The position numbers were made by a program, and so were the translations under genes. Under the pieces are notes generated by a model. That model was not told the DNA's origin, searched no databases, and was given only the letters and a program-made list of their open reading frames with translations. From positions 124,001-188,000 of IMG/VR virus record IMGVR_UViG_3300022935_000005: a stretch of 64,000 nucleotides of DNA. One strand, written 5' to 3'. Positions 23,212 through 62,234 of the stretch are shown here, piece by piece (position 1 is the first letter of the stretch; each line of letters starts with the position of its first letter).

Positions 23212-23219
23212 AGGGCAAC

Positions 23220-25138: not shown

Positions 25139-25140
25139 TT

Positions 25141-25578
25141 ATGGAGAATTTAGAACTTATAGCTACTCATATGTGCAAAGAATCTTGTGTCGGATATCAT
25201 GGTAACCTATTTGGTGGAACCATGCTGGCATGGTTGGATGAAGCCGGTGTCGCCTTCGCTTCACAAGTCTGCGGTTCGCCAAGAATGGTGACAAAGTCAA
25301 TATCAGAAGTCATCTTCGTGCGGCCTGTTCGTCCTGGGCAAATCATAAAGATATACGGTGATGTCGTGAATATTGGCAACACGTCTATTAAGATTAGATT
25401 GTTTGCAAGGCGACACAGCGTAGTGAACGGCTCACAAAAGCCTGTCTGCGATGTTGAGATGACGTTTGTCAGAATTGATGGCGACGGTGAGCCTGTACCA
25501 ATCTTGAATATAAAAGAAAAGTACGCTGATAAAAAGCAGAAGATAGAATCTGAAGTAAGAAAAGATATGGAGTATTGA
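25141..25578 (+). CDS. Hotdog-fold acyl-CoA thioesterase (YciA-like)
   Basis: HGNLFGGTMLAWLDEAG, FVRPV, GNTSI, MTFVRIDGDGEP. Confidence 0.85.
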   Translation: MENLELIATHMCKESCVGYHGNLFGGTMLAWLDEAGVAFASQVCGSPRMVTKSISEVIFVRPVRPGQIIKIYGDVVNIGNTSIKIRLFARRHSVVNGSQKPVCDVEMTFVRIDGDGEPVPILNIKEKYADKKQKIESEVRKDMEY

Positions 25579-26327
25579 TGTTAGATAGAGTTGAATTGTA
25601 TGGCGATGGTATTGGAACAGTAGAGTACGTCGAGCACATGGGCAATGATTTGACAATCGTCAATAGCGCCAGAGTTTCATTTGGAAAGCACAAGGAAGAG
25701 TTAGATGAGAAAGACGAGAAGCTTATTAAGTACCTTGTTAACCACGGCCACACGAGTACGTTCGAGCATAATGTTGTCACTTTTCGCTTTGTGGTTCCTC
25801 TCTTTATTAGGAGCCAGCATCACCGTCATAGGACTTGGAGTTATAACGAGATTAGCAGACGGTATACTGACGTTGATCTAAGGTTTTATGAACCGGATAG
25901 TTTTAGGACCCAGCACAAGAGTAATAGACAGGCAAGCAACGTCCAAGAAGAGGTGGATCCTGTAATAATACCTGACTTAAGTGACGCTGGCTATGGGACG
26001 AGAGCATCACAAGTAGTGAGAGAGCACCATGTCCAGAGCTTGAACCTTTATAACAGTTTACTGTCAGCGGGAGTTTGTAGAGAGCAGGCACGAGGGGTGC
26101 TTCCTCAAAACCTCTACACAGAGTATTACGGGACATGTTCATTACATAACGCTCTTCATTTTTGTCGTCTCCGATTGCACGAGGGCGCCCAGTGGGAAAT
26201 TCAAAGAGTGGCTGAGGCCATGGTACAAATAATGTCGACATTGTATCCTGTCGCTGTGTCTGCGTGGATTGACAACTTGGATGATAAAGACCTCCGAAAA
26301 AAAATGAAAAAAAATATTAGCCTGTAA
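25578..26327 (+). CDS. thyX: FAD-dependent thymidylate synthase
   Basis: HTSTFEH; RHRTWSYNEISRRY (RHR-X7-SxR); EQARGVLP; AQWEI. Confidence 0.95.
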   Translation: MLDRVELYGDGIGTVEYVEHMGNDLTIVNSARVSFGKHKEELDEKDEKLIKYLVNHGHTSTFEHNVVTFRFVVPLFIRSQHHRHRTWSYNEISRRYTDVDLRFYEPDSFRTQHKSNRQASNVQEEVDPVIIPDLSDAGYGTRASQVVREHHVQSLNLYNSLLSAGVCREQARGVLPQNLYTEYYGTCSLHNALHFCRLRLHEGAQWEIQRVAEAMVQIMSTLYPVAVSAWIDNLDDKDLRKKMKKNISL

Positions 26328-31237: not shown

Positions 31238-31660
31238 ATGAGCTGGATACCACCGAAATCTCCTTTTGATTTACTTCAAGAAAGGTATTGGCCAGACGAT
31301 TGGAAAATTCTGATCGTCTGTCTTTTATTGAACCAAACAAGCCGTAAACAAGTTGAGCCAATGATCGAGTCATTCTTCGAGAAGTGGCCTGATCCAGAGT
31401 CAGCTTCCAATGCTGATGAAGATGAGATGCGTGATCTTGTCCGTCCTCTTGGCATGTTCAACCGCCGGGTGAAATCCATCAAAAAGATGTCTCAACAGTT
31501 CATGTCTGGTTTCGATAACGCAATCGAGCTTTATGGTTGTGGAAAGTATGCCGATGACACCTACCGAATCTTTATGAAGGGTGAGTGGAGAGATGTTGAG
31601 CCAAATGATCATGCTCTGAACGATTATCACGGATATTTACGGGAGGTGTATTCTGCCTGA
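31238..31660 (+). CDS. MBD4-like HhH-GPD mismatch DNA glycosylase (stand-alone catalytic domain)
   Basis: WIPPKSPFDLLQE...WKILIVCLLLNQTS...PLGM..RR...ELYGCGKYADDTYRIF...WRDVEPNDHALNDYH parallels the recalled MBD4 glycosylase domain. Confidence 0.85.
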   Translation: MSWIPPKSPFDLLQERYWPDDWKILIVCLLLNQTSRKQVEPMIESFFEKWPDPESASNADEDEMRDLVRPLGMFNRRVKSIKKMSQQFMSGFDNAIELYGCGKYADDTYRIFMKGEWRDVEPNDHALNDYHGYLREVYSA

Positions 31661-32465
31661 AGGTCCTGAGGTAAAGAAGACCACAGACGGATTGAGAGAG
31701 TTCTTCTTAAATGAGGAGATAACTGCTCTAGATTTCGGATCTGGAAGGTACGCCAAGAAAGAACCCATCGGCTACTCATCTTTTTGCGAAGAACTTCCAA
31801 AGCTGGTGACAGCAGTTGGATGCAAGGGAAAGTTCATCTATTTTGTGTTTGCAGACGGCAGCAGCATGTGGAACACTTTAGGCATGACAGGATGGTGGTC
31901 AGAGACAGCAGGCTATCATCCTCGCGCTGCGTTGTATGTCAATGATGATAAACATATGGTGTATAACGATATGAGGAATTTTGGGACCTTCAAGTTTGTC
32001 AGCACATACGATGAGCTAAAGAAGAAACTTAACTCCTTAGGCCCAGACTTGCTCTCTGAAGATGTTTCGTTAGATGTATTTAAGAAAAGCCTTACGAAAG
32101 GAAAGAGGGCTGAGAAACCCATCTCGCAACTCTTGATGGATCAATCTGTCGTGTCAGGAATTGGAAACTACCTCAAGGCAGAGATCTTGTACAGCTGCAA
32201 GATGTCTCCTCATCGGCTGTGTCAAGATATCTCTGATGGCGAGTTCGAGTCGCTGCTTTACGCTTCAAGAAGTATTATGAAGTTATCGTATAGCACTGGT
32301 GGTGCGACCATCCGAAATTATAAAAGCACGACTGGTAAAAATGGCATGTACACTAGAAGGTTCGCTGTCTATAATCAAAAGAGTGATCCTCTTGGAAACG
32401 CTGTAGTCAGAGAAACGACGGCTGATAAAAGGACCACACACTGGGTTCCAAGTATTCAGAAATAA
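31653..32465 (+). CDS. Fpg/Nei-family DNA glycosylase/AP lyase with zincless finger; CTG start
   Basis: CTG-CCT-GAA-GGT-CCT-GAG-GTA = (M)PEGPEV with SD GGAGGT 5 nt upstream; KGKF, GMTG, DMRNFG, H2TH LMDQSVVSGIGNYL, RTTHWVPSIQ. Confidence 0.9.
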   Translation: MPEGPEVKKTTDGLREFFLNEEITALDFGSGRYAKKEPIGYSSFCEELPKLVTAVGCKGKFIYFVFADGSSMWNTLGMTGWWSETAGYHPRAALYVNDDKHMVYNDMRNFGTFKFVSTYDELKKKLNSLGPDLLSEDVSLDVFKKSLTKGKRAEKPISQLLMDQSVVSGIGNYLKAEILYSCKMSPHRLCQDISDGEFESLLYASRSIMKLSYSTGGATIRNYKSTTGKNGMYTRRFAVYNQKSDPLGNAVVRETTADKRTTHWVPSIQK

Positions 32466-33094: not shown

Positions 33095-33865
33095 ATGAAG
33101 GCACCTCAAAGAATCCTAAAGAGAAAGATTAAAATCTTAAGTTCAGAGCTTAAGATGCTACAATCTTACAAAACTGATATCGCGTTGTTGAACGATGACT
33201 ACAAGTCTGAGTTCCTTCGCGATATGCTGTATATAGAGGATAAGTTATCTTCGACACCAGAAGACGATTCGAAACCAGATGAGAATCAGGATTCAAAAGA
33301 CATCGTAGACACGCTGAGATTAGATCCCTCAAAATCGAACCAGCGCTGGAAAAAAACGGAAGACGGGTGGAAACTCGAAGATGATGAAGAAGACAGCAGA
33401 GAATCTCCAGAAGATTCTTCGATAGACGAAAAACCAGATATTCCAGCCTGGGCGAAAAAGTTATATAAAAAGATCGCATTAGCAGCCCATCCAGACAGGA
33501 CATTACAGGAAGAAGAGGCGAAGAGAAAAAGATTGAATAAGTTGTTTGCTGACGCAGCTCAAGCCATAACTGATGGTGAATTTAAGAGCCTGCTCGGGTA
33601 TGCGCTAGAGCTGGACATAGAGGTAGACGAAGATCCAACCAGCATCCCGCTGCTTCAAGCCAGAGTTGATACTCTGAAACAAGAAATATCTCAAATCCAA
33701 GGTTCTCTAGAGTGGTTGTGGGGCGAGCATCTTGGGGCTCATGATATCCGAGCGAAGATAGCAATGGGGTATTTCTCTAAGAAGAACCTGCTTTTGAAAA
33801 ATGAAGACCTGCTTGTTACAATAAAAGAAATGGAGCAAGCTAATGAAGCCCGGGGATCTAGTTAA
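33095..33865 (+). CDS. J-domain-like (HPD motif) protein
   Basis: AKKLYKKIALAAHPDR. Confidence 0.65.
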   Translation: MKAPQRILKRKIKILSSELKMLQSYKTDIALLNDDYKSEFLRDMLYIEDKLSSTPEDDSKPDENQDSKDIVDTLRLDPSKSNQRWKKTEDGWKLEDDEEDSRESPEDSSIDEKPDIPAWAKKLYKKIALAAHPDRTLQEEEAKRKRLNKLFADAAQAITDGEFKSLLGYALELDIEVDEDPTSIPLLQARVDTLKQEISQIQGSLEWLWGEHLGAHDIRAKIAMGYFSKKNLLLKNEDLLVTIKEMEQANEARGSS

Positions 33866-34260: not shown

Positions 34261-34265
34261 ATTCG

Positions 34266-34293
34266 TGAAAATGTCCTGTCTGTGTGGTATAAT
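34266..34293 (+). promoter_or_regulatory. Sigma70-like promoter TGAAAA-N16-TATAAT (extended TG -10)
   Basis: Upstream of dnaE. Confidence 0.7.
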
Positions 34294-34321: not shown

Positions 34322-37300
34322 ATGCGTCGTTCATCTCTTCTTGTGCCTGACAGGTTCATCTCTCTTCATTCCCATGATGGGTTTAGTACCTTCGATGGCT
34401 TAGGCTATCCTCAAGAGCACATCGATTTTGTGATTGAGAATGGGATGGACGGGTGGTGTCTTACCAACCATGGTCACATGAATTCTTTCGGTCACGCTTT
34501 TTTGCACGCTGAAAAGATTGCGAAGCGTGGCGGAAACTTTAAGTTTGTACCAGGGTGCGAGATGTATGTCCATCCTGATCTAGATGCGTGGCGCCTTGAC
34601 ATGCAGATCCGAGAAGCTGCTAAGAAGGGTGATAAGGCCGCGCTCATGACTCTTCGTTCTCAGCGAGAAGCTATTGCTACACCACTGACTGCAATTGTTG
34701 ATGGTGATGACGAAATTGTAGATGTTGGCACCGAAGATGCTGGTCTCACTGTTGAGAATGAAGAAGAAACCAAGTCTGCAAAGTTCTATGATCCAATCAA
34801 ACGCCGCCATCATTTGGTAGTCCTTCCCAAGACGAGCGAAGGTCTCCAGCGTCTTTTTCACCTCGTCAGTAAGGGGTATCAGGAGGGCTTCTATCGCTTC
34901 CCACGTATCGACTATAAGATGCTAAAGGAAGCGGCCGCTGGTGGTCATCTGATGGTTTCTACAGCTTGTATCGGCGGTCCAATCGCTTACGAGGTTTTCC
35001 GTCATGCTCAGCAAGTTGAGTTTGATGATCTTTCGTATAAGTTGATGGATGACCCGACTTTCCGAAACAACGTCTTGACTGGCGTTGGAAATGCGTACCA
35101 GGGTCTTGTAGACGCTGTTGGTATCGATGATGTTAATCTCGAACTTCAATTTAATAAGCTTCCTGCGCAGCATCTGGTCAACCGCGCGATTATTGAGTTT
35201 GCTAACAAGAACGGGCTACAAGATAAGCTGGTAGTCACAACCGATTCTCACTACGCACGTCCAGAACACTGGCGAGAGCGTGAGCTCTATAAGAAGCTTG
35301 GGTGGCTTAACTATCGAGAGTTTGATCCCTCCAAGTTGCCGCAAGGTATTGAAGACTTGAAGTGTGAACTATATCCTAAGAACAACGAACAGGTTTGGGA
35401 TACGTACCTTAAGACAACTGACGGTATGGATTTTTATGATGATGAGGTAGTGCACAACGCCATCACTCGCCCGTATGATCTTGTCCACAACGAAATCCAA
35501 CAGATTACCCCTGATCGTTCGATGAAGCTGCCCTCTTACGTCGTTCCTGAAGGTACTACTGACGATAAGGCTCTACTTGAAGCCTGTAAGAAGGGTTTGG
35601 TCGAGCGTGGTCTTGCGCACGATGAAAAGTACATCAAGCGTCTCAAGTATGAGCTAAAGATCATCAAGGAAAAGAATTTTTCTCGATATTTCTTGACCAT
35701 GGGCGCCATCATCGATATCGCTAAGAAGGCGATGCTGGTCGGTCCAGGCCGCGGTTCTGCTGCCGGAAGTCTCGTGGCGTATGTTCTCCGTCTTACCGAC
35801 GTTGATCCATTTGAGTATGATCTCATGTTTGAGAGGTTCCTCAACCCAAGCCGTGAAGGTGCACCAGATATTGATACTGATGTAGGTGACCGTGATCTTC
35901 TTATCAACATGATGAAAGAGGAGTGGGGCGACGAAAACATCGTTCCAATCTCTAACTACAACACTTTTAAGCTTAAGTCTCTGGTCAAGGACATCTCTCG
36001 CTTTTACGGGATCCCGTTCGATGAAGTCAACAAGGCTTTGGCTCCTGTAGAGGATGACGTGAAGCGTGCCGTGTTCAAGCCCGGCACTGATAAAAACTTG
36101 TTTGTCTTGCTTTATGAAGATGCGATTGCTCACTCGAAGACATTTCGCGACTTTATTGAGAAGTACCCTGAGGTTGCCGAGCCGATTCAGGTACTCTTTA
36201 AGCAGAACAAGGCACTTGGCCGCCACGCCGGTGGATGTATTGTTTCGGAAAACATCGCTGAGCGTATGCCTCTGATTAAAGCCCGCGGCGAACTACAAAC
36301 TCCGTGGGTTGAAGGTATGAACTACAAGCATCTTGAAACCTTCGGCTGGATTAAGTTTGACCTTCTCGGTCTTGAAACACTACGTATTGTTCAGCGTACT
36401 ATCGAGCTGATTCTTCAGCGCCGGGAGGGTATCGAGGATCCGACATTCTCGCAAGTCTATGAGTGGTTCAACAATAACATGGACCCCAAGGTTCTCGATA
36501 TGGACGACCAGCATGTTTATAAGCATGTCTACGAAGAAGGTCGCTTCCCAGGAGTCTTCCAGCTGGCTGGTCGAGGTGCTAGAAACCTCTTTATGAAAGC
36601 AAAGCCCAAGAGCATCATCGACATTGCTACTCTGACATCGATTTATCGCCCGGGCCCTCTCACTGCGAAAGTAGACAAACTGTATATCCAGGCAAAGAAC
36701 AACCCTGATGATATTGACTACGGCCATCCTCTTATCAAGGAAGTTCTTGAAGAGACATACGGTATGATTGTCTTCCAAGAGCAGATCATGAAGTTGTGTT
36801 CCGTGGTGGCTGGCTTCCCGGAGGAGGAAACGGACACAGTCCGCCGGAGCATTATGAAGCGTAAAGCTTCTGAAGCCGCTGAGTCCCTTGCTAAGGCTCG
36901 AGCGATTAAGGAACAGTTTGTTGCTGGTGCCGTCAAGAATGGTGTCGACGCACAGCTTGCCGATGATCTGTACGAAAAGATTCTCTACTTCTCAGGCTAC
37001 GGTTTCAATAAGGCGCACGCTGTTTCGTACGCTATTGACTCGTACTACTGCGCTTGGCTTCTAACATACTTTGAGGAAGAGTGGCTTTGCGCTTATCTCG
37101 AGGCGATGTCTGGTAATGACAAGAAGCGTAGTAAGGCCTTTGGTGAGGTTAAGGCTCTCGGCTATCGAGTCGTTCCGCTTGATATCAATTATGCAACCAA
37201 GAAGTGGACTATCCTCGACGGTAAGAAGTTCATGCCTTCTTTCCTTTCTTGTAAGGGCGTCGGAGAATCTGCGATCGATGAGATTGTCGCTAATCGGCCG

Positions 37301-37936
37301 TACCAGAATATCGACGATCTGTTATGGGACGAGGATGGTAAGTGGCGCCACTCTAAGTTCAACAAGCGGGCAATGGAAGCGTTAATTAATATTCGCGCAT
37401 TCGAATCCATGGATCTTGTAGGCGACGGTAAGACATTCGAGAGCTATAAGCACATGCATGAAGTCATTATAAACCGGAACACCGATATCAAGAAATGGAC
37501 TAAGCGTGATCCAGAGCGAGGAAAGAGTAATTTCAAAGAGGCGCTATTGGATACTGAGGGAATCGGTAATTGGACCCGTCGTGAGATGGTCGAAAATAGC
37601 ATGAAGCATTTCGGTTCATTTAACGCCTCCACACTCGTTAATGAGGAAATTCAGGCTCGGCTCTCTAAGAAGAATGTACGTTGTATCGATGACATCGACG
37701 AGCATGATGTATATTGGTTCTTGGTGACAGACGCTAAGCCGAAGCTTACTAAAAACAAGAAGCCATATCTTTTGGTGACGGCCACAGGACTAGACGGCAA
37801 AAATATCAGGATATTCTGCTGGGGCTGGGATGGTCAGACAGAGTTGCCCCTCTACAGCCTTTGTGTTGCAGAAGTTAAGAAAAATGATTTCGGATATCAA
37901 ACTTCTATGAGTAAAGTCAAGCTTCTTCGTATATGA
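34322..37936 (+). CDS. dnaE: DNA polymerase III alpha subunit (family C)
   Basis: PHP domain (SLHSH, TNHG, DSHY), GPGRGSAAGSLVAY, PDIDTD, KFDLLGL, YGFNKAHA. Confidence 0.95.
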   Translation: MRRSSLLVPDRFISLHSHDGFSTFDGLGYPQEHIDFVIENGMDGWCLTNHGHMNSFGHAFLHAEKIAKRGGNFKFVPGCEMYVHPDLDAWRLDMQIREAAKKGDKAALMTLRSQREAIATPLTAIVDGDDEIVDVGTEDAGLTVENEEETKSAKFYDPIKRRHHLVVLPKTSEGLQRLFHLVSKGYQEGFYRFPRIDYKMLKEAAAGGHLMVSTACIGGPIAYEVFRHAQQVEFDDLSYKLMDDPTFRNNVLTGVGNAYQGLVDAVGIDDVNLELQFNKLPAQHLVNRAIIEFANKNGLQDKLVVTTDSHYARPEHWRERELYKKLGWLNYREFDPSKLPQGIEDLKCELYPKNNEQVWDTYLKTTDGMDFYDDEVVHNAITRPYDLVHNEIQQITPDRSMKLPSYVVPEGTTDDKALLEACKKGLVERGLAHDEKYIKRLKYELKIIKEKNFSRYFLTMGAIIDIAKKAMLVGPGRGSAAGSLVAYVLRLTDVDPFEYDLMFERFLNPSREGAPDIDTDVGDRDLLINMMKEEWGDENIVPISNYNTFKLKSLVKDISRFYGIPFDEVNKALAPVEDDVKRAVFKPGTDKNLFVLLYEDAIAHSKTFRDFIEKYPEVAEPIQVLFKQNKALGRHAGGCIVSENIAERMPLIKARGELQTPWVEGMNYKHLETFGWIKFDLLGLETLRIVQRTIELILQRREGIEDPTFSQVYEWFNNNMDPKVLDMDDQHVYKHVYEEGRFPGVFQLAGRGARNLFMKAKPKSIIDIATLTSIYRPGPLTAKVDKLYIQAKNNPDDIDYGHPLIKEVLEETYGMIVFQEQIMKLCSVVAGFPEEETDTVRRSIMKRKASEAAESLAKARAIKEQFVAGAVKNGVDAQLADDLYEKILYFSGYGFNKAHAVSYAIDSYYCAWLLTYFEEEWLCAYLEAMSGNDKKRSKAFGEVKALGYRVVPLDINYATKKWTILDGKKFMPSFLSCKGVGESAIDEIVANRPYQNIDDLLWDEDGKWRHSKFNKRAMEALINIRAFESMDLVGDGKTFESYKHMHEVIINRNTDIKKWTKRDPERGKSNFKEALLDTEGIGNWTRREMVENSMKHFGSFNASTLVNEEIQARLSKKNVRCIDDIDEHDVYWFLVTDAKPKLTKNKKPYLLVTATGLDGKNIRIFCWGWDGQTELPLYSLCVAEVKKNDFGYQTSMSKVKLLRI

Positions 37937-37990: not shown

Positions 37991-39013
37991 ATGCACTTAG
38001 GCACTTATGAAGGTTTCACTGACTGTTATGTTGATATGATTTCAAAGGTCATGCGTGAACCGCAATACGAATCTGCACCTCGCGGCCAGAATATCAAAGA
38101 GATCCTCGGGGCTTCATTTACAATCAAGAACCCTCGTGACAGAATTCCTTACGTCGTAGGTCGTAAGTTTAGCATGAGTTACATGGTCGCTGAGCTGATA
38201 TGGTATCTTGCGGGTGATAATAGTACTGAGTGGATATCGAAGTATTCATCCTTCTGGAAAGATATTAGTGACGACGGTGTGACTGCAAATTCAGCGTATG
38301 GTGCCCGTCTCTTTAAGCCGCATGACAAGATTGCGCAGGGCAGATATACTCAGCTCGATTACGTGATTGAAGAGCTTAAACGAGATCCTGATTCTCGGCG
38401 AGCTGTCATGCATCTAAGAGTTCCAGATGACTCTATTGATGCGAAGCTTGATGTACCTTGTACACTAGCTCTACAGTTTTTTATTAGAAACGGTGCTCTA
38501 CACCAAGTTGCTAACATGAGAAGCTCGGACTTGATTTTTGGGATTGCTTACGATATTCCCGCATTCACAATGTTTCAAGAACTGATTGCAAATGAGCTTG
38601 GCGTTGATGTGGGTACGTACACTCACACAAGCAACTCACTCCATATCTACGAACGTCATTTTGATATGGCTGAAGAGATTACTAGAACGGGCCTCGTTGA
38701 TGAATCGCTGAATCTACAACAGGCAAATGGTCCTATGCCACCGCTGGTAGGTGATATCAAAGAAGTCCAAGAGAAGGTGGCTGAAGTCTACGAGTATGAA
38801 TCCCAACTACAGCGTTGCGAGAATTTACAGGATGTAATAAACCTACATGATTTAAGCCAGTCTTTCTCTGATTCTATGTTCCGTGATTTTGCAACTATTC
38901 TTACGTCATCTCGTCTAAGAAAACTTGGTCATAAAGCGGATGCGCGAGCAATGTCCGCGCAGACGTCCTTTAGCGGATATTCTTTTAATGTCAGGAGTAA
39001 CTCTAATGCATAA
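37991..39013 (+). CDS. dCMP hydroxymethylase-like thymidylate synthase homologue (T4 gp42-like)
   Basis: ELIWY, NSAYG, DSRRAV, PCT (Cys157), MRSSDLIFGIAYD with Asp188 at the ThyA Asn177 position, SLHIYERHF. Confidence 0.85.
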   Translation: MHLGTYEGFTDCYVDMISKVMREPQYESAPRGQNIKEILGASFTIKNPRDRIPYVVGRKFSMSYMVAELIWYLAGDNSTEWISKYSSFWKDISDDGVTANSAYGARLFKPHDKIAQGRYTQLDYVIEELKRDPDSRRAVMHLRVPDDSIDAKLDVPCTLALQFFIRNGALHQVANMRSSDLIFGIAYDIPAFTMFQELIANELGVDVGTYTHTSNSLHIYERHFDMAEEITRTGLVDESLNLQQANGPMPPLVGDIKEVQEKVAEVYEYESQLQRCENLQDVINLHDLSQSFSDSMFRDFATILTSSRLRKLGHKADARAMSAQTSFSGYSFNVRSNSNA

Positions 39014-40151
39014 GAAATACGACTACCTTATCGTAGGTGCTGGCCTTTTCGGTGCCACTTTCGCTCGGCAGCTGACTGATGCGGGATACACATGTCTAGT
39101 TGTTGATAGACGGAGCCACATCGGCGGGAATGTATACAGCGAAAAGAGAAACGGCATCGATGTTCACGTCTACGGTGCTCACATTTTCCACACTAATGAT
39201 GACCGTATTTGGGACTATGTAAATCGATTTACAGAGTTTAACAATTACATTAACAAGCCTAAGGTTCGGTACGGTAACAACATCTATTCTTTCCCGATCA
39301 ATTTGATGACTCTTCACCAGCTCTGGGGTGTTACGTCACCAGCAGAAGCAGAAGCAAAGCTAAAAGAGGTCAGGATTCCTTGTGAGAATCCCGACAATCT
39401 AGAAGATTGGATTCTATCACAGGTAGGCCCGGAGATCTATCAGACGTTCATTAGGGGGTACACGATGAAGCAGTGGCAGCGTGACCCAAGAGAGCTACCA
39501 GCCTCTATTATCAAGCGGCTACCGATTCGAATGATTTTCGAAGAGAATTACTTTTTTGACAAGTACCAAGGTATTCCAGTAGGCGGGTATACGCAAATGG
39601 TCGCGAATATGTTAGAGGGTATTGAGGTCAGGACAGGGGTCGAGTATTTTACCGACCGGTCAGAGCTTGAGTCCTTGGCACACAACGTAGTATTTACCGG
39701 TAAGGTCGATGAATATTTCGATTACTGTGAGGGTGAGCTAGAGTATCGAACCCTACGGTTCGAACATGAAGAGCTTGAGGGCGATTTTCAAGGTAACGCG
39801 GTTGTGAATTATACACATCCAGAAGTGCCCTTCACACGTATTCTAGAGCATAAGCATTTTCAGCCCCAGACGGCTTCGAAGATTGAGAACACAATCGTCA
39901 CTCGAGAGTATTCTGCAGAGTATAAGCGAGGAAAGACACCGTACTATCCGATCAACGATGCGCGAAATACTGCTCTATACCAAAAGTATGCTGCCATGAA
40001 AGCTGCGACTCCTAACGTCATTTTTGGCGGGAGGTTATCTGAATACAAGTACTATGATATGCATCAGGTGATCGGTTCTGCTCTTGTTAAGGCAAGAAAA
40101 GAAATTGAAAAACGTAAGAGCAACGACTACAATATAACAGTTGAATCATAA
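39006..40151 (+). CDS. glf: UDP-galactopyranose mutase
   Basis: VGAGLFG FAD motif, HIGGN, YGAHIFHT, YFFDKYQGIP, LEYRTL, TRILEHKHF, PYYP, GRLSEYKYYDMHQ. Confidence 0.95.
   Translation: MHKKYDYLIVGAGLFGATFARQLTDAGYTCLVVDRRSHIGGNVYSEKRNGIDVHVYGAHIFHTNDDRIWDYVNRFTEFNNYINKPKVRYGNNIYSFPINLMTLHQLWGVTSPAEAEAKLKEVRIPCENPDNLEDWILSQVGPEIYQTFIRGYTMKQWQRDPRELPASIIKRLPIRMIFEENYFFDKYQGIPVGGYTQMVANMLEGIEVRTGVEYFTDRSELESLAHNVVFTGKVDEYFDYCEGELEYRTLRFEHEELEGDFQGNAVVNYTHPEVPFTRILEHKHFQPQTASKIENTIVTREYSAEYKRGKTPYYPINDARNTALYQKYAAMKAATPNVIFGGRLSEYKYYDMHQVIGSALVKARKEIEKRKSNDYNITVES
40106..40133 (+). promoter_or_regulatory. Sigma70-like promoter TGAAAA-N16-TACAAT inside the 3' end of glf
   Basis: Recurring motif upstream of the glycosyltransferase. 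Confidence 0.55.
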
Positions 40152-40162
40152 GGAGATTTGTA

Positions 40163-41218
40163 ATGAGAGTACTTTATAGCTTTTGGGGCTTTATCACCCC
40201 GCTCGAAAAGAACACAGTTGTCAACACACCAGACGGTGAGCGAGGTAACAGGGTTGATTTTGTCAATGAACTAATGTCTCGAGGGCATACTCCAGTTCAG
40301 CTGCAGAAGATGCGCGATGAAGAGCAGTACCCAGGCGTTGAGTATGATGCAACTGGCTTCCCAGATGGTGACATTCTGTACGTTGAGTGGAGGTGGCCAA
40401 CTTGGAAGAACAGCGGAGAAAACCCAGCTGAATCTGATTACAATCGACAATGCGAGGTTCTTGATTACTATCACGCTCAGGGTGTTCCGATTATTATTCA
40501 CGACGGTGATTTGAAGATGACTCCTGAGGAAGAACTCCGATGGCCAAACGCTATTCTAGCAGATGCCTGTGTGTCACCGCAGCACCAGACCCGTAATCGT
40601 ATCACAATTCCGTGGTGCAATTACCTTAAGCGGTATTTCGAGCCAGTTGAGTATTCGTACAACTACACATACGTTGGAAACAACTACGAGCGAGAGGATC
40701 CATTTGAGAAGTATTATGTACAGCCCTCTCAGCGGCTTCGCATGGCCGGCCTACAGACATCCATCTACGGTAACTGGCTTCAAAAGTCTCCAGAGCGAAT
40801 TGATCCAGCTCTTTTGCTAGCCAAGACGCCAAGCGTTGCTTTTGGGCCACGTCTTTCCTACAAGGATATTTTCGCAGTCTTAAACGAGTCGATTACTGTG
40901 ACTCACATTACCAAGCCTGCTTACACTCCTTATGGGAACATCACAGGTCGATTCTTCGAGGCAATCAAGAGTAACGTTCCAGCCTTGGTGCCGATTGAGT
41001 TTCAGCATGCTGTTCCAGTGGGCCTTAAGGATGAGTCCCTACTCGTAAGAAGCGCTGACGATGTTGTTGAGAAAGTAAAGTGGCTTTCTACATTAAATGC
41101 TTCCGAGAGAAAAGCTCTTGTTGACGCTCAAGAAGAAGCATTACGAACCGTGATAAACCCTCATCCCGGATACCGAGTTGACCTTCTTGAAAGTGTTGCA
41201 GGAGATTTTATCCGATGA
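40163..41218 (+). CDS. DNA glycosyltransferase, T4 beta-glucosyltransferase-like (GT-B fold)
   Basis: 351 aa; HDGDLK, YVGNNYERE, YGNW, NITGRFFEAIKSNVPALVPIEF, VRSADDVVEKV, RKALVDAQEEAL match recalled T4 BGT segments in order. Confidence 0.7.
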   Translation: MRVLYSFWGFITPLEKNTVVNTPDGERGNRVDFVNELMSRGHTPVQLQKMRDEEQYPGVEYDATGFPDGDILYVEWRWPTWKNSGENPAESDYNRQCEVLDYYHAQGVPIIIHDGDLKMTPEEELRWPNAILADACVSPQHQTRNRITIPWCNYLKRYFEPVEYSYNYTYVGNNYEREDPFEKYYVQPSQRLRMAGLQTSIYGNWLQKSPERIDPALLLAKTPSVAFGPRLSYKDIFAVLNESITVTHITKPAYTPYGNITGRFFEAIKSNVPALVPIEFQHAVPVGLKDESLLVRSADDVVEKVKWLSTLNASERKALVDAQEEALRTVINPHPGYRVDLLESVAGDFIR

Positions 41219-41733
41219 AAGTAGCTTTTATTGGTCCTGACATGACTGGCAAGTCGAATATTGCTGAAGCGTTATCAGAGAGGTTGTCGATTCCAGTATT
41301 CAAGAACTCTGGAGAGTGGAAGACACAGCTGGATAGCCCAAATTACTTCCTGAACTTGCTTCGTTACGGCGGTCCGTTTTTAATGGATTTTATGAAGCAG
41401 ACCAACGTAAGCGTTATTCTGGACAGGTTCTACCCTTGTGAGCTAGTATACTCTCAAGCGTTCGATAGAGACACTGATCATCAAGCCATCGCGTGGATGG
41501 ATGAGCAGTTTTCGAATGAAGGAGGAGTCTTTATTCTTTGCCTGAGAAAAGATTATTCTGGACTAGTCGATGATGTATTCCCAGAAGACCTCCCTGGGGA
41601 GAAACTAGAAGAGATTGGCTCTCTTTATAAGGATTTTGCGAAGTGGTCCCAATGTGAAGTGATGACTCTATACACTGATGATTGGGATATCAATAGACAG
41701 ATTAAAGACATAACTGATTTTTTGGGAGTTTGA
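41215..41733 (+). CDS. dNMP kinase (thymidylate kinase-like)
   Basis: P-loop GPDMTGKS; ILDRFYPCELVY. Confidence 0.8.
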   Translation: MKVAFIGPDMTGKSNIAEALSERLSIPVFKNSGEWKTQLDSPNYFLNLLRYGGPFLMDFMKQTNVSVILDRFYPCELVYSQAFDRDTDHQAIAWMDEQFSNEGGVFILCLRKDYSGLVDDVFPEDLPGEKLEEIGSLYKDFAKWSQCEVMTLYTDDWDINRQIKDITDFLGV

Positions 41734-41734
41734 C

Positions 41735-42727
41735 ATGAGTTTGCGTAAAGCGTTAGTTACAGGGTGTTGTGGTTTTATTGGATCTCATCTTACTAGGATG
41801 TTAGTAGGACAAGGTTGGTACGTAGAGGGTGTTGATGATTTGTCGAACGGCGATCTTACATCTATCGATGACCTAAAATTCAGAGCAGTACATGATTCTT
41901 TGTTACCGTTCTATAATGCTGAACCCTCGGCTGGTAGTCTTCTTGTGATGACGTGCGATTTCGCTTCGCCAGCTGTCTTAGAGAGGGTTACAACTGGAAG
42001 TTATGATGTTATTTTCCATCTTGCTGCAAACCCCCGTGTTGAGTTCTCCGTACAAAATCCAGCTTTGACAACTAATGATAACGTTCAAAAGACTGTAGAG
42101 CTGATGTCAGCCGCAAGAAATAATATCGATCGTTTTGTCTTCGCTGCTTCTTCTGCCGCATATGGAAACGGTGTAGAGTTGCCTACTACAGAACAAGAGC
42201 AGTGTAATCCCACTTCACCATATGGTCTACAGAAGCTTGTTGTAGAGCAATTCGGTAAGCTGTATAGTGAGTTATACGGCATGGATTTTGCCGCCTTGAG
42301 GTTCTTCAATGTGTACGGTCCAGGTCAGGACGGGACTAGCCCTTACTCAACAGCAATATCTGCTTGGTGCACACGCCTAAAGAAAGGTGAGCCTCTACGA
42401 AGTGATGGTGACGGCCAGCAGTCAAGAGATCTAGTCTATGTCGAAGATGTAGCTAGCGCTCTAACGCAGGTAGCGAATCATCCAGAGAGACTTGGGTTTG
42501 AGGTCTTTAATGTTGGGACCGGTATTGCCTTGACGAACAAAGAAGTTCTAGATCATCTGACAAAGCTGTTTCCTGATGCTGAAGTAAATCATGCTCCTGA
42601 AAGACCTGGCGACGTTAAGCACACTCTAGCTGCCGCTGATCACATCAAGGAGAAAATTGGGTGGGAACCTAAGGTTGAATTTTGGGATGGTCTGACAGCC
42701 ACACTAGAGTGGTGGAAGCTAGCATGA
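41735..42727 (+). CDS. NAD-dependent NDP-sugar epimerase/dehydratase (extended SDR, GalE/WbpP-like)
   Basis: TGCCGFIGSH, FHLAA, ASSAAYG, YGLQK, LRFFNVYG, GDGQQSRD. Confidence 0.9.
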   Translation: MSLRKALVTGCCGFIGSHLTRMLVGQGWYVEGVDDLSNGDLTSIDDLKFRAVHDSLLPFYNAEPSAGSLLVMTCDFASPAVLERVTTGSYDVIFHLAANPRVEFSVQNPALTTNDNVQKTVELMSAARNNIDRFVFAASSAAYGNGVELPTTEQEQCNPTSPYGLQKLVVEQFGKLYSELYGMDFAALRFFNVYGPGQDGTSPYSTAISAWCTRLKKGEPLRSDGDGQQSRDLVYVEDVASALTQVANHPERLGFEVFNVGTGIALTNKEVLDHLTKLFPDAEVNHAPERPGDVKHTLAAADHIKEKIGWEPKVEFWDGLTATLEWWKLA

Positions 42728-43187: not shown

Positions 43188-44066
43188 ATGAGCACACTAG
43201 ATCCTAATTCAGTAAACGTAGTAATCTATCACGCCGATTGTACCGATGGATTCGGCGCCGCCTACTCTGCATGGAAGTGCTTGGGCAATAGAGCAGAATA
43301 CTACCCATGCAAGCACGGGACAGAGCCACCCAACGTGAAAGGAAAGAATGTTGTCATTCTTGACTTTTCATTTAACAATGAAACGACAAAGAAGATGATC
43401 GAAGAGTCTGCCGCACTCTTGATTATCGACCACCACAAGTCTGCGATGGTTGAGCTTCATGACATTCCTAACACGCATTTCGATATGACAAAGTCAGGTG
43501 CGATGCTTTCATGGGAATTCTTTCACCCTGGGAAAGAGCCACCGAAGTTTATCAAATACATCATGGATAGAGACTTGTGGACCTGGGAACTTGACTACTC
43601 AAAAGAGTTCTCTGCCGCGTTCGATATGGTTCCTTTTGAGTTCGAAGAATTTGAAAAGTTTGAAGATGATTCCGTCTTTGACGATGCAGTGAAGAGAGGC
43701 TCATACATTCTTGCTTATAGTAAGACTGTTATAAAGAAAGTCTGCGAAAAAGCACAACAAAGAAAACTGGATGACAAAGATGTCTTAGTTGTCAATGCAT
43801 CTCACTGGATGTCAGAGATTGGTGCTCGTCTAGCTCCTGATTGCGATTTTGCTTTAATCTGGTACTGGGATCACGAGGAGGGCCACACAAAGGTTAGTCT
43901 CCGTTCATTCCATGATACTGTTGATGTAGCTGAGGTCGCAAAAAGGTTTGGCGGCGGCGGCCATAGAAAGGCTTCCGGGTTCCAGCTCCCAAAGGGATCC
44001 CACATAGAGGATATATTTGATAAACCAAAAAAGACCTTGAGGTCCAGAAAGAAGCAGGAAGAGTAA
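43188..44066 (+). CDS. DHH/DHHA1 phosphoesterase
   Basis: YHADCTDG, ILDFS, IDHH, VSLRS, GGGGHRKASG. Confidence 0.9.
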   Translation: MSTLDPNSVNVVIYHADCTDGFGAAYSAWKCLGNRAEYYPCKHGTEPPNVKGKNVVILDFSFNNETTKKMIEESAALLIIDHHKSAMVELHDIPNTHFDMTKSGAMLSWEFFHPGKEPPKFIKYIMDRDLWTWELDYSKEFSAAFDMVPFEFEEFEKFEDDSVFDDAVKRGSYILAYSKTVIKKVCEKAQQRKLDDKDVLVVNASHWMSEIGARLAPDCDFALIWYWDHEEGHTKVSLRSFHDTVDVAEVAKRFGGGGHRKASGFQLPKGSHIEDIFDKPKKTLRSRKKQEE

Positions 44067-44069: not shown

Positions 44070-44624
44070 ATGAGTAAGGTTTATTCTACGATCTTAGCCG
44101 ATCCACCCTGGATGCAACGTGGAGGTGGTAAATCAAAACGAGGTGCTGACAGGCACTACCCTTTGATGAAAGAGGCAGATATCAAGAAAGTCATGTCTGA
44201 CATGCTGGATGGCAAAGTGGCCGACAATGCTCACATGTATATGTGGGTCGCCAATAACCACCTTCCTGAAGCGCTGAGAATAATAGAGCATCTGGGTTTC
44301 AAATATATCACCAATCTTGTATGGGCTAAGACTCATTTCGGTTTAGGAAGGTACTTCCGCGGCCAGCATGAGCTGTGCATATTCGCTACTAAGGGCCGCG
44401 GCTTTTCTGCTAGGACACAAGCTAATAACGTTCCCTCCCTTATTGGGGGTAAACTAGTTTCTCCTACCCGCCACAGTGCGAAGCCCGCCGAGATGTACGA
44501 ATTGATAGAAGGTAGAAGTGAGGGCCCCTTTCTGGAGCTGTTTGCGAGGACGAGACGCCCCGGCTGGGATGCGTTGGGTAATGAAGTACCTGAGGAAAAA
44601 GATGCAAAGACCGAACTGGGATGA
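44070..44624 (+). CDS. MT-A70 family N6-adenine (or N4-cytosine) methyltransferase
   Basis: ILADPPW, HYPLM, GLGRYFRGQHE, HSAKP, LELFAR, WDALGNE. Confidence 0.9.
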   Translation: MSKVYSTILADPPWMQRGGGKSKRGADRHYPLMKEADIKKVMSDMLDGKVADNAHMYMWVANNHLPEALRIIEHLGFKYITNLVWAKTHFGLGRYFRGQHELCIFATKGRGFSARTQANNVPSLIGGKLVSPTRHSAKPAEMYELIEGRSEGPFLELFARTRRPGWDALGNEVPEEKDAKTELG

Positions 44625-45021
44625 CATATGGATGAAGTTTGCCTATTTGATTGCTGACCGGTCATATGACCCGCGTCACAAGGTGGGTTCTGTAGTTGTT
44701 ACTGACTCAAACACACAAGTGCTAGCAATAGGCTACAATGGAAATTATTCAGGCGGTCCAAATGAAGTCGAGTCAAACACACCTGGCGAGTCTGGCATGA
44801 TCCACGCGGAGATCAATGCAATGATAAAGCTAGACTTCAATAATCCGAATAGAAAGATAATGTATTTGACGCTAAGTCCTTGTCGAGCCTGCGCGAAAGC
44901 TATTGTCAATGGTGGCATTTCTGAGGTGGTGTACAGCGAAGAATATCGCGATACTTCTGGCTTAGAACTACTAAGTCACGCAGGAGTCAAAGTCAGAAGG
45001 CACGATATTAAGCAACTCTAG
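44602..45021 (+). CDS. dCMP deaminase
   Basis: RPNWD, GYNG, HAEINA, PCRAC. Confidence 0.9.
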   Translation: MQRPNWDDIWMKFAYLIADRSYDPRHKVGSVVVTDSNTQVLAIGYNGNYSGGPNEVESNTPGESGMIHAEINAMIKLDFNNPNRKIMYLTLSPCRACAKAIVNGGISEVVYSEEYRDTSGLELLSHAGVKVRRHDIKQL

Positions 45022-51152: not shown

Positions 51153-51171
51153 GCATATGAGGTGTTTTGTT

Positions 51172-52161
51172 ATGTCAAGAAGATACGAAGCTTTTAGAAA
51201 GAAGATTGGGTCTTTATTATTCGAGGACTCTTACGTTACACACGGTACCATAGACAATATGCGTGCCGGTCATATCGACGACCAGCCTGACTCTGATCCG
51301 CTGTCAATTAACGATTTACCAGTAGATCCAGCACCTCAAGCAGCAGTACAGCTCTCTCAGGATGTACCTCCGATAGATGATCCTGAATATACACCTGTTA
51401 ATAAAGTCGAGCTAGCAGCAGCTTTGTCTGCGTTGGCTAAAGAATTACCGGATGAGAAGGAAATGATTGGAAATACATACGAGAAGTTTAGAAAGTTTGT
51501 AGACGATAACCAAGATGTTGGGATTAAAATTGTTGACAATGGCGGTTCTTTATCACCAGAAGAAGTTAATGAAGCAAGGGTCCTCATAAGAAACTATTTG
51601 CTTACAGAAGCTCTTAGTGATACAGACCTTTACGGTAATAAATATGACGAAGATCCGTTGGGAGATCTGGACGGCCCGTCCGAAGAAGAGCTCAAGGCAA
51701 TTGAGAATCCAGCGAAGGATCAAGACACATTAGCGGATATTGCAAAAGAAATGGGCGTTAGTACTTCTGGAGTTAAGAGACTCGAGGCAGAAGCGATTAA
51801 GAAGATGAGACTGTTTGCCGTTCATTTCCCGCAAGATGAGCAAGCAATAAAAGAAATGGCTATGGAATATTTCGCAAAAGGGCTACATGAGCTAGACTTG
51901 ATTGATGCTGAAGATGCCGCCGACCTTATGACAAGTCCAGATGCTTTTCTTCTTCCATCCTTTAGGCAGTTCATGTGGGATTCATTTCTGAATAACGTCT
52001 ATAAAAAAATGCTTAGAGATGCTGAAGCGCAGGGTATATCTGAAGATAACTTAAGTGACCTGCAGCCCGGGCTGCTAGACAGAGCCAGAGATTACTTCAC
52101 AAGATTAGCAGATTCTAAAAAGATGAAGGTACTAGTATCTTCTTTGGCTGTCGCAGAGTAA
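51172..52161 (+). CDS. Protein with a sigma70 region-4-like HTH
   Basis: TLADIAKEMGVSTSGVKRLEAEAIKKMR; SD GAGGTG before ATG 51172. Confidence 0.65.
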   Translation: MSRRYEAFRKKIGSLLFEDSYVTHGTIDNMRAGHIDDQPDSDPLSINDLPVDPAPQAAVQLSQDVPPIDDPEYTPVNKVELAAALSALAKELPDEKEMIGNTYEKFRKFVDDNQDVGIKIVDNGGSLSPEEVNEARVLIRNYLLTEALSDTDLYGNKYDEDPLGDLDGPSEEELKAIENPAKDQDTLADIAKEMGVSTSGVKRLEAEAIKKMRLFAVHFPQDEQAIKEMAMEYFAKGLHELDLIDAEDAADLMTSPDAFLLPSFRQFMWDSFLNNVYKKMLRDAEAQGISEDNLSDLQPGLLDRARDYFTRLADSKKMKVLVSSLAVAE

Positions 52162-52163
52162 CG

Positions 52164-58771: not shown

Positions 58772-58937
58772 AGAAATCCAGCGATTAAGAAGCCTGGGCG
58801 TCTTGACAGAGACTGAGATCGCGATGAGGCAAGGAGATCTTCTTGTTGCTGTTGACGTAGTTTCTAACACCCGCCGCGTCGTTGATTCTTCTAACGTTAC
58901 AGAGAGTGTGTCTTCTAAAAGGTTACTAAAGGGATGA
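58746..58937 (+). CDS. Hypothetical protein
   Basis: SD GGAGG; 63 aa. Confidence 0.55.
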   Translation: MDENVLSNEEIQRLRSLGVLTETEIAMRQGDLLVAVDVVSNTRRVVDSSNVTESVSSKRLLKG

Positions 58938-60511: not shown

Positions 60512-60518
60512 AACAGGA

Positions 60519-62233: not shown

Positions 62234-62234
62234 T

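What the first reader, a model, noticed from the sequence alone, without database searches (positions are those of the whole stretch)
40163..41218. Divergent T4 beta-glucosyltransferase homologue with its own promoter
Against my recollection of T4 BGT, the segments align in order: HDGDLK ~ FTDIR (catalytic base Asp100); YVGNNYERE ~ YGGSFRSGQRE; YGNW ~ FGNA; NITGRFFEAIKSNVPALVPIEF ~ FITLRVWETMASDAVMLIDEEF (UDP-binding Arg/Glu); VRSADDVVEKV ~ VNNRAELIDRV; RKALVDAQ ~ RKEMLSIQ. The length (351 aa) is also similar. The N-terminal acceptor/sugar domain is very different, which suggests a different donor. A TGAAAA-N16-TACAAT promoter inside glf could boost its expression. It could be a new hmC-labelling reagent.
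Basis: partly seen in the sequence, partly recalled or inferred. Interest (0 to 1): 0.8.

Follow-up and report, generated by a model that had tools for sequence, protein, structure and literature searches.

The report
Phage BGT-like DNA sugar transferase
A large uncultured salt-marsh phage carries a distant relative of the phage T4 enzyme that attaches sugar to modified cytosine in DNA, next to genes that make the modified cytosine and a galactose-type sugar donor, so it probably coats its DNA with a sugar other than glucose.

Summary
The ORF at 40163-41218 (351 aa) is real. At profile level it is a full-length but very distant homologue of T4 DNA beta-glucosyltransferase (BGT). A 110-member family profile finds only T4 BGT in the PDB (E 3.8e-14). 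Family-versus-BGT-family hhalign gives 98.9% probability (E 1.5e-17) over 314 columns and pairs D116 with BGT D100, R263 with R269 and E266 with E272. The AlphaFold model (pLDDT 91.8) has T4 BGT as top Foldseek hit, nearly tied with other GT-B enzymes. No family member matches Pfam PF09198, so it is a sister family, not a BGT orthologue.

Context points to DNA as the acceptor. In 47 of 51 related viral loci the gene sits beside a ThyA-family enzyme with the T4 gp42 signature (L143D, N177D, D169 kept). A small P-loop kinase, a UDP-hexose 4-epimerase and DnaE are usually there too. ThyX elsewhere in the window covers dTMP synthesis. UDP-galactopyranose mutase adjoins the transferase in three separate lineages, so the sugar is probably galactose-type, possibly galactofuranose; this is untested.

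The promoter (TTGAAA-N17-TACAAT, 40105-40133) is conserved in relatives despite divergent spacers.

Verdict: reader supported; a new variant of a known kind.

The parts
37991..39013 (+). ThyA-family enzyme predicted to be a dCMP hydroxymethylase (5hm-dCMP synthase), with a C-terminal extension of about 90 aa
   Evidence: PF00303 at 126 bits but below every NCBIfam thymidylate synthase cutoff. Aligned to E. coli ThyA, T4 gp42 and RL38J1 gp216 it keeps C146, has L143D and N177D, and retains D169. That is the T4 gp42 pattern, not the D169N of 5-hydroxy-dCMP synthases (rule from PMC13326640).
39006..40151 (+). UDP-galactopyranose mutase (Glf)
   Evidence: TIGR00031 equivalog at 364.8 bits, above the 303.75 cutoff; PF03275 at 260.8 bits. 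Gene call taken.
40105..40133 (+). Sigma-70-type promoter-like element TTGAAA-N17-TACAAT inside the 3' end of glf; predicted transcription start near 40140
   Evidence: TTGAAA-N17-TATAAT is conserved upstream of the transferase in 7 further distinct variants with divergent spacers. In L008/L009, L011, L014/L015, L018 and L026 the -10 hexamer lies after the glf stop codon. No transcription start data.
40150..40155 (+). Ribosome-binding site AAGGAG
   Evidence: Read directly from the sequence.
40163..41218 (+). GT-B glycosyltransferase, a distant homologue of T4 DNA beta-glucosyltransferase. Candidate base D116 (or D114); UDP-binding R177, R263 and E266
41215..41733 (+). Small P-loop kinase, predicted dNMP kinase for 5hm-dCMP
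   Evidence: AAA_28 and phrog_761 'thymidylate kinase'. Weak PDB match to SPbeta YorR. Found next to the transferase in 50 of 51 related loci.
41735..42727 (+). SDR UDP-hexose 4-epimerase (GalE-like)
   Evidence: PF01370 at 179 bits. Best NCBIfam match is galE, but below its cutoff. Best PDB matches are UDP-GlcNAc and UDP-Glc 4-epimerases. The S124/Y149/K153 triad is kept, there is no dehydratase-type acidic pair, and the gatekeeper position Y299 is Thr.
43188..44066 (+). DHH/DHHA1 phosphoesterase; conserved cluster neighbour of unknown role
   Evidence: It is 58-84% identical in most related loci where it is found.
44602..45021 (+). dCMP deaminase (context; recurs in related clusters)
   Evidence: Precomputed PF00383 hit. 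Also present in L034, L050 and L058.
25575..26327 (+). ThyX flavin-dependent thymidylate synthase (context; covers dTMP synthesis)
   Evidence: PF02511 at 168.8 bits.
34322..37936 (+). DnaE-type DNA polymerase III alpha (context; the replication module that holds the cluster)
   Evidence: Linked to the transferase in 50 of 51 loci.

Best explanation
The gene encodes an inverting GT-B DNA glycosyltransferase of a previously uncharacterised sister family of T4 beta-glucosyltransferase.

Proposed pathway (all steps inferred):
1. The adjacent gp42-type ThyA homologue converts dCMP to 5-hydroxymethyl-dCMP.
2. The adjacent P-loop kinase and host kinases raise it to the triphosphate.
3. The phage DnaE-type polymerase incorporates it into DNA.
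4. After replication the transferase flips out 5hmC and transfers a sugar from a UDP-sugar onto the hydroxymethyl group. D116 (or D114) acts as general base. R177, R263 and E266 hold the UDP.

The donor is probably not plain UDP-glucose. A UDP-hexose 4-epimerase travels with the transferase in most relatives, and in this clade a UDP-galactopyranose mutase is inserted directly upstream. The most likely route is therefore UDP-Glc to UDP-Galp to UDP-Galf, giving a beta-galactosyl (possibly galactofuranosyl) 5hmC that shields the DNA from host nucleases.

A conserved sigma-70-type promoter at the end of glf gives the transferase, kinase and epimerase genes their own transcription start.

Shown here: homology, fold, conserved residues, gene linkage, promoter conservation. 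Inferred: acceptor, donor, stereochemistry, timing, biological role.

The confidence of 0.7 is for a BGT-like transferase acting on 5hmC in phage DNA. Galactofuranose as the sugar is rated separately at about 0.35.
For: Homology and fold:
- The 110-member profile hits only T4 BGT in the PDB (E 3.8e-14); the next real glycosyltransferase scores E 0.92.
- hhalign against the T4 BGT sequence gives 96.4%. Against a 29-member BGT family alignment it gives 98.9%, E 1.5e-17, 314 columns, residues 1-350 against 1-351.
- The AF2 model has pLDDT 91.8 and pTM 0.89 with two Rossmann-like halves.
- The Foldseek top PDB hit is 1nzd, T4 BGT (E 1.1e-9, TM 0.61). T4 AGT-DNA complexes also rank high (TM up to 0.69).
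- The ESM Atlas feature search ranks PF09198 clusters 2nd and 8th.

Conserved residues:
- R263 is invariant and D114, D116, Y170, G172, Y175, R177, G203, W205, Y254, G258 and E266 are at least 90% conserved across 110 representatives.
- They map onto BGT D100, R195 (or R191), Y261, R269 and E272.

Context:
- Among 51 IMG/VR loci carrying a relative (24-100% identity), 47 have the ThyA homologue, 50 the kinase and 50 DnaE within 10 kb, in several gene orders.
- The linkage also holds for a representative at 29% identity.
- Every linked ThyA homologue has L143D, N177D and D169.
- ThyX is elsewhere in the window. dCMP deaminase recurs in the clusters.

Donor:
- Glf passes its equivalog cutoff and adjoins the transferase in three separate lineages of the transferase tree.
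- The epimerase has a 4-epimerase triad.
- In published phage clusters, DNA glycosyltransferase activity can depend on a partner epimerase (bioRxiv 10.1101/2023.12.21.572611).
- A phage Glf has been proposed to feed galactosylation of 5-hydroxycytosine in Rhizobium phage RL38J1 (PMC13326640).

Promoter.

The cluster sequence is present in salt-marsh RNA libraries.
Against: - There is no biochemical evidence.
- The window protein against T4 BGT is not significant pairwise, and no member reaches Pfam PF09198.
- Foldseek does not separate BGT from other GT-B enzymes that act on small molecules.
- No transferase position co-varies with the presence of Glf. That argues against a donor switch specific to this clade. 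Glf could feed a second transferase elsewhere in the roughly 250-kb genome, or the Glf-less relatives could use host Glf.
- The Thr gatekeeper of the epimerase also allows UDP-GlcNAc/GalNAc.
- No dCTPase was found in the 64-kb window, so the extent of cytosine replacement is unknown.
- The protein is acidic (pI 5.2). The BGT family median is also about 6.3, so this does not discriminate.
- Some distant family members sit in non-phage-looking contexts.
- The RNA-library data are contigs and do not show a transcription start.
Confidence: 0.7

Rival explanations
1. It is a 5hmC-DNA transferase that uses ordinary UDP-glucose, UDP-galactopyranose or UDP-GalNAc. Glf then serves another purpose: a second, unseen transferase that adds an outer Galf, or modification of a host glycan.
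For: - No transferase residue co-varies with the presence of Glf, and most relatives lack Glf.
- The epimerase gatekeeper is small (Thr), compatible with acetylated hexoses.
- Only 64 kb of a genome of at least 248 kb was examined.
- RL38J1 uses several transferases for one glycan (PMC13326640).
Against: - Glf lies immediately beside the transferase in three independent lineages.
- No second glycosyltransferase was found among the window ORFs that were scanned (Pfam scans; precomputed Pfam hits for about 30-50 kb).
- An epimerase would be unnecessary if UDP-glucose were the donor.
Confidence: 0.3
2. It is a glycosyltransferase for a non-DNA acceptor, such as a cell-envelope glycan, a virion protein or a small molecule. 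In that case the resemblance to BGT reflects only the shared GT-B / PF13524 C-terminal domain.
For: - The only Pfam hit is the generic PF13524.
- Foldseek nearly ties BGT with small-molecule and LPS transferases.
- Distant members are fused to methyltransferase or carbamoyltransferase domains, or lie in an integrase-bearing element.
Against: - The profile search picks T4 BGT alone among hundreds of GT-B chains in the PDB.
- The alignment extends through the N-terminal acceptor domain, including the catalytic Asp.
- The gene is tightly and repeatedly linked to a gp42-type hydroxymethylase, a dNMP-type kinase and the replicative polymerase, not to structural or lysis genes.
Confidence: 0.07
3. 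The acceptor is a different modified pyrimidine: 5-hydroxymethyluracil, or 5-hydroxycytosine as in RB69 and RL38J1.
For: - The best phage matches of the ThyA homologue include genes annotated as dUMP hydroxymethylases.
- Glf-associated galactosylation of 5-hydroxycytosine is the published precedent (PMC13326640).
Against: - N177D points to dCMP, not dUMP.
- D169 is retained, whereas all tested 5-hydroxy-dCMP synthases have D169N.
- L143D matches hydroxymethylases.
- The transferase is unrelated to RL38J1 gp215.
Confidence: 0.05

Closest known systems
T4 DNA beta-glucosyltransferase (CAZy GT63, Pfam PF09198; PDB 1bgt/1nzd)
   Same: - Same length (351 aa) and same GT-B fold.
- Full-length profile-profile homology.
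- The conserved Asp aligns with catalytic D100, and the Arg/Glu UDP-binding pair is conserved.
- The gene lies beside a gp42-type dCMP hydroxymethylase, as b-gt lies beside gene 42 in T4.
   Different: - About 14% identity.
- No PF09198 match.
- The N-terminal domain is strongly diverged.
- It carries a single Arg where BGT has R191 and R195.
- It is accompanied by a 4-epimerase and Glf, implying a donor other than glucose.
- It is found only in uncultured aquatic and salt-marsh phages with DnaE-type replication.
GT-B 'subclass III' phage DNA glycosyltransferases and ThyS-associated GT-B clusters mined from metaviromes (Pyle et al., bioRxiv 10.1101/2023.12.21.572611)
   Same: - Phage GT-B enzymes structurally similar to T4 BGT that glycosylate 5hmC.
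- That paper reports many metagenomic GT-B clusters associated with thymidylate synthase homologues and epimerases.
- It shows epimerase-dependent transferase activity.
   Different: - The characterised enzymes there belong to TET/5mYOX post-replicative pathways.
- The word 'mutase' does not occur in the main text.
- Whether this family was among their roughly 25,000 contigs could not be checked.
Rhizobium phage RL38J1 (Pootjesviridae) hexosyl-5-hydroxycytosine pathway (PMC13326640)
   Same: - Same operon logic: ThyA homologue, then transferase, then kinase in the same order.
- The phage also encodes Glf, with galactose as the base-proximal sugar.
   Different: - The RL38J1 ThyA homologue has D169N and makes 5-hydroxy-dCMP; here D169 is kept.
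- The RL38J1 transferase gp215 shows no detectable similarity to this family.
- In RL38J1 Glf lies about 60 kb from the cluster; here it is inside it.
T4 alpha-glucosyltransferase (GT72; PDB 1xv5/1ya6)
   Same: GT-B DNA 5hmC transferase. High structural similarity to the model (TM up to 0.69).
   Different: It uses a retaining mechanism. No sequence-profile match was found; the PDB profile searches returned only BGT.

Membership tests
T4 beta-glucosyltransferase family (GT63 / Pfam PF09198) | Significant match to the family's curated model PF09198 | tested here: not met
   The window protein hits only PF13524. 0 of 110 family representatives hit PF09198 at E<=0.01, whereas all 42 true BGT relatives carry it.
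T4 beta-glucosyltransferase family (GT63 / Pfam PF09198) | Homology to T4 BGT detectable over both domains | tested here: met
   hhalign of the family against the BGT family gives 98.9%, E 1.5e-17, 314 columns. HMM against the PDB gives E 3.8e-14 for the C-terminal domain.
T4 beta-glucosyltransferase family (GT63 / Pfam PF09198) | GT-B fold with two Rossmann-like domains | tested here: met
   AF2 model with pLDDT 91.8. The Foldseek top hit is 1nzd, and all top hits are GT-B enzymes.
T4 beta-glucosyltransferase family (GT63 / Pfam PF09198) | Catalytic general-base Asp (D100) and UDP-binding Arg/Glu (R191/R195, R269, E272); the roles of these residues are from my own knowledge of the BGT structural literature | tested here: met
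   D116 pairs with D100, R177 with R195 (R191 in the HMMER alignment), R263 with R269 and E266 with E272. All are at least 90% conserved in the family. Only one of the two BGT arginines (191/195) has a counterpart.
T4 beta-glucosyltransferase family (GT63 / Pfam PF09198) | Transfers sugar to 5hmC in duplex DNA with inversion of configuration | not testable with these tools
   Supported only by context.
dCMP hydroxymethylase (T4 gp42 type) - for the neighbouring gene 37991-39013 | ThyA fold with catalytic Cys146, N177D (dCMP specificity), an acidic residue at L143, and D169 retained | tested here: met
   The alignment with E. coli ThyA, T4 gp42 and RL38J1 gp216 shows C, D, D, D in the window and in all linked loci. 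The criteria come from PMC13326640.
5-hydroxy-dCMP synthase (RB69 gp48 / RL38J1 gp216 type) | D169N substitution | tested here: not met
   D169 is retained in the window and in every linked locus. The RL38J1 control shows N.
UDP-galactopyranose mutase (Glf) - gene 39006-40151 | Score above the TIGR00031 equivalog cutoff | tested here: met
   364.8 bits against a cutoff of 303.75.
UDP-glucose 4-epimerase GalE - gene 41735-42727 | Score above the TIGR01179 cutoff; S-Y-K triad | tested here: inconclusive
   152 bits, below the 262 cutoff. The triad is conserved and the best PDB matches are UDP-hexose / UDP-HexNAc 4-epimerases.
RL38J1 gp215-type galactosyltransferase | Sequence similarity to gp215 | tested here: not met
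   hhalign 0.1% and BLASTP E 0.28.

The most novel reading that the evidence does not exclude
This family is a widespread, uncharacterised second branch of the GT63 DNA beta-glycosyltransferases. In the Glf-carrying phages it would use UDP-galactofuranose to make 5-(beta-D-galactofuranosyl-oxymethyl)cytosine. No report of that base turned up in the literature searches run here. It would be the first furanose hexose attached to 5hmC. The accessory sugar-nucleotide genes (Glf, a second SDR, methyl- or carbamoyl-transferase fusions) would diversify the DNA glycan around a constant transferase-kinase-hydroxymethylase core.
Probability: 0.35. Interest if true: 0.75.

Novelty: new variant of a known kind. 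Interest (0 to 1): 0.55.

Why it matters
Glycosylated 5hmC is the classic phage defence against restriction and some CRISPR systems. T4 BGT is also a standard reagent for labelling 5hmC in epigenomics.

A distant BGT-like family with a different, probably galactose-type, donor would do three things:
- It would extend the known chemistry of DNA glycosylation.
- It would give a second scaffold for orthogonal 5hmC labelling.
- It would show that the T4 paradigm (hydroxymethylase, kinase and beta-transferase) exists in unrelated large environmental phages with DnaE-type replication.

The family is common in metagenomes. It has 258 clusters at 50% identity, and this exact protein appears in 63 blocks of the assembly collection.

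Tried and rejected
Searches that found nothing:
- megablast and tblastn of the cluster and the transferase against about 50,700 GenBank phage records gave no match. No cultured phage carries this transferase.
- PHROGs and NCBIfam gave no hit for the transferase.
- Single-sequence phmmer against the PDB gave only noise.
- The search for related loci with the broad alignment A2 failed because no stretch was conserved enough. The closer alignment A1 was used instead.
- A literature search for BGT Asp100 found no open-access paper. The residue roles are therefore from my own knowledge.
- No tRNA genes in the window.

Hypotheses rejected:
- The transferase is an orthologue of the RL38J1 galactosyltransferase gp215.
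- The ThyA homologue is a 5-hydroxy-dCMP synthase or a dUMP-specific enzyme.
- The acidic pI argues against DNA binding. The BGT family has the same pI distribution.

Tests that gave no answer:
- A search for donor-specificity residues co-varying with Glf found only four conservative positions, none shared by the three Glf lineages.
- Salt-marsh metatranscriptome data are assembler contigs. One contig bridges glf and the transferase, but no 5' ends can be read.
- No second glycosyltransferase and no dCTPase were found among the window ORFs that were scanned or had precomputed Pfam hits. Short ORFs were not scanned, and three giant ORFs gave no Pfam hit at all.

Full report
**Observation**

The ORF is as described: 40163-41218 on the + strand, ATG start, 351 aa. 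An AAGGAG ribosome-binding site lies at 40150-40155. I fetched the authentic T4 b-gt gene from NC_000866.

Pairwise, the two proteins are not significantly similar. The collinear BLASTP alignment has E=5.6, and single-sequence phmmer against the PDB finds nothing relevant.

**Homology**

The protein belongs to a large family known only from metagenomes.
- 187 clusters at 90% identity are found with E<=1e-3, all unnamed or 'hypothetical'.
- 258 representatives at 50% identity are found.
- None is in about 50,700 GenBank phage records.

Profile-level results:
- A 32-sequence profile hits T4 BGT as the only PDB match (E 9.6e-5).
- A 110-representative profile raises this to E 3.8e-14 over the whole C-terminal domain. 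The next genuine glycosyltransferase scores E 0.92.
- hhalign against the T4 sequence gives 96.4%.
- I built a 29-member alignment of true BGT relatives, all carrying PF09198. Against it, hhalign gives 98.9%, E 1.5e-17, 314 aligned columns, residues 1-350 against 1-351.

In that alignment HDGDLK pairs with FTDIR, so D116 aligns with catalytic D100. Other pairs are Y170/G172 with Y186/G188, R177 with R195 (R191 in the HMMER alignment), G203-N204 with G214-N215, Y254 with Y261, R263 with R269 and E266 with E272. These positions are at least 90% conserved across the 110 representatives, and R263 is invariant.

Structure and independent support:
- The AlphaFold2 model is confident (pLDDT 91.8, pTM 0.89) and has two Rossmann-like halves.
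- Its best Foldseek match in the PDB is the T4 BGT D100A-UDP-glucose complex 1nzd (E 1.1e-9, TM 0.61).
- Other GT-B enzymes are practically tied: tetrahydrobiopterin glucosyltransferase, tll1591 and T4 alpha-glucosyltransferase.
- The BFVD viral library gives generic phage GT-B hits.
- A language-model feature search independently places PF09198 clusters at ranks 2 and 8.

Against membership proper, none of the 110 representatives reaches Pfam PF09198. 62 of them hit the generic PF13524, which also covers the C-terminal half of many true BGTs. I therefore treat this as a sister family of GT63, not a BGT orthologue.

**Context**

The window is part of a large uncultured myovirus.
- It has a T4-type baseplate protein.
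- Contigs carrying this protein reach 248-281 kb.
- The sequence is found in salt-marsh samples.

The gene lies in the replication and nucleotide-metabolism module, in this order:
- DnaE-type polymerase (34322-37936)
- ThyA homologue (37991-39013)
- Glf (39006-40151)
- the transferase (40163-41218)
- P-loop kinase (41215-41733)
- SDR epimerase (41735-42727)
- a 143-aa ORF
- DHH phosphoesterase
- MT-A70 methyltransferase
- dCMP deaminase

Of 51 IMG/VR loci encoding a relative (24-100% identity), 47 contain the ThyA homologue, 50 the kinase and 50 DnaE within 10 kb. Most contain the epimerase. Several different gene orders occur, and the exceptions are mostly truncated contigs. A representative at 29% identity is again next to a ThyA homologue, DnaE, DnaB and dCMP deaminase.

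**The neighbouring ThyA homologue**

It falls below every NCBIfam thymidylate synthase cutoff. I aligned it with E. coli ThyA, T4 gp42 and RL38J1 gp216. The window protein and all linked homologues have C146, L143D, N177D and an unchanged D169.

The criteria summarised and tested in PMC13326640 are:
- N177D indicates dCMP as substrate.
- An acidic residue at position 143 indicates a hydroxymethyl product.
- D169N indicates 5-hydroxy-dCMP synthases.

By these criteria it matches the T4 gp42 dCMP hydroxymethylase signature. The RL38J1 control shows D169N as expected. A ThyX gene at 25575-26327 covers dTMP synthesis, so the ThyA homologue is free for this role.

**Sugar donor**

- Glf passes its equivalog threshold (364.8 against 303.75 bits).
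- The SDR enzyme has the Ser-Tyr-Lys triad of 4-epimerases and lacks the dehydratase acidic pair.
- Its best solved relatives are UDP-GlcNAc and UDP-Glc 4-epimerases.
- It has Thr at the gatekeeper position (E. coli GalE Y299). That permits both plain and N-acetylated hexoses.
- On a maximum-likelihood tree of the transferases, Glf is adjacent in three separate lineages: the window clade, L047 and L050/L052.
- Another clade carries a second SDR enzyme directly after the transferase.
- Distant members are fused to methyltransferase or carbamoyltransferase domains.

This looks like donor or glycan diversification around a constant core.

However, no transferase residue co-varies with Glf. I therefore cannot claim that this enzyme itself takes UDP-Galf. 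UDP-Galp, UDP-GalNAc or an unseen second transferase remain possible. Published precedents are epimerase-dependent phage DNA transferases (bioRxiv 10.1101/2023.12.21.572611) and a Glf-encoding phage with galactose on 5-hydroxycytosine (PMC13326640). The transferase of that phage is unrelated to this one.

**Promoter**

TTGAAA-N17-TACAAT lies at 40105-40133. This pattern occurs twice in the window against 0.15 expected.

In relatives of the Glf clade, TTGAAA-N17-TATAAT is present at the same place in 7 further distinct variants. Their 17-nt spacers have diverged. In L008/L009, L011, L014/L015, L018 and L026 the -10 hexamer lies downstream of the glf stop codon, so coding constraint cannot explain its conservation. 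It is absent where glf abuts the transferase (L016, L017) and in clades without Glf.

Salt-marsh RNA libraries hold the cluster with no sequence differences in the listed contigs apart from one C>T in X4. They are available only as contigs, and one bridges glf and the transferase, so no transcription start can be read.

**Assessment**

The most likely function is post-replicative glycosylation of 5hmC in phage DNA by an inverting BGT-like mechanism. The donor is probably a galactose-configured UDP-sugar. My confidence is about 0.7 for a 5hmC-DNA transferase and about 0.35 for Galf specifically.

The general kind is known: a phage ThyA homologue with a GT-B DNA transferase and an epimerase. What is new is the family itself, a distant GT63 relative with no characterised or cultured member, and the embedded Glf. 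Together they predict an undescribed galactosyl or galactofuranosyl 5hmC.

Noticed in passing
window 25575-26327: A ThyX flavin-dependent thymidylate synthase coexists with the ThyA-family hydroxymethylase, which suggests a division of labour between dTMP synthesis and 5hm-dCMP synthesis.
   Followed up: partly
window 31238-31660 and 31692-32465: An HhH-GPD glycosylase and an Fpg/Nei-type DNA glycosylase are encoded just upstream of the polymerase. This is unusual cargo for a phage predicted to carry modified cytosine.
   Followed up: no
window 1254-5672, 5864-9274, 9571-12642: Three consecutive giant ORFs (1472, 1136 and 1023 aa) have no Pfam hit at all.
   Followed up: no
window 33794-33822 and 34265-34293: A second exact TTGAAA-N17-TACAAT and a TG-extended GTGAAA-N17-TATAAT lie just upstream of the small ORFs and of the DnaE gene. 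They are possibly the same promoter class as the one before the transferase.
   Followed up: partly
window 22609-25578, 51157-52553, 58934-63444: Auxiliary genes: ClpP, an amidase, a glutamine-synthetase-like protein, a thioesterase, two sigma-factor-like genes, pterin-4a-carbinolamine dehydratase, a GroEL-like chaperonin and peptide deformylase.
   Followed up: no
window 43188-44066: The DHH/DHHA1 phosphoesterase is the best conserved neighbour after DnaE (81-84% identity where the transferase is 79-85%). Its role in the cluster is unknown. It might process nucleotides in place of a dCTPase.
   Followed up: no
window 44070-44624 versus L006-L018: The MT-A70 adenine methyltransferase is only 29-34% identical in most otherwise close relatives (73% in L010). 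It looks like a swapped cassette.
   Followed up: no
window 37991-39013: The ThyA homologue is about 90 aa longer at its C-terminus than T4 gp42 or E. coli ThyA. The extension is present in most linked homologues (lengths 314-351 aa).
   Followed up: no
P0190, P0265, P0194; locus L057: Distant family members are fused to a SAM methyltransferase, a carbamoyltransferase C-terminal domain or an HTH_58 domain. The HTH fusion lies in an integrase-bearing contig (L057) that does not look like a phage replication module.
   Followed up: partly
L034:11034-12023 and 15743-16796: In another clade the cluster holds a second SDR epimerase/dehydratase directly after the transferase, plus thymidine kinase and dCMP deaminase. 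This suggests a different sugar donor there.
   Followed up: partly
GenBank MK504445.1 (Lactobacillus phage ATCCB) 34348-37355: A cultured phage has a ThyA homologue and Glf about 1.3 kb apart but no detectable member of this transferase family. It may hold an analogous pathway with another transferase.
   Followed up: no
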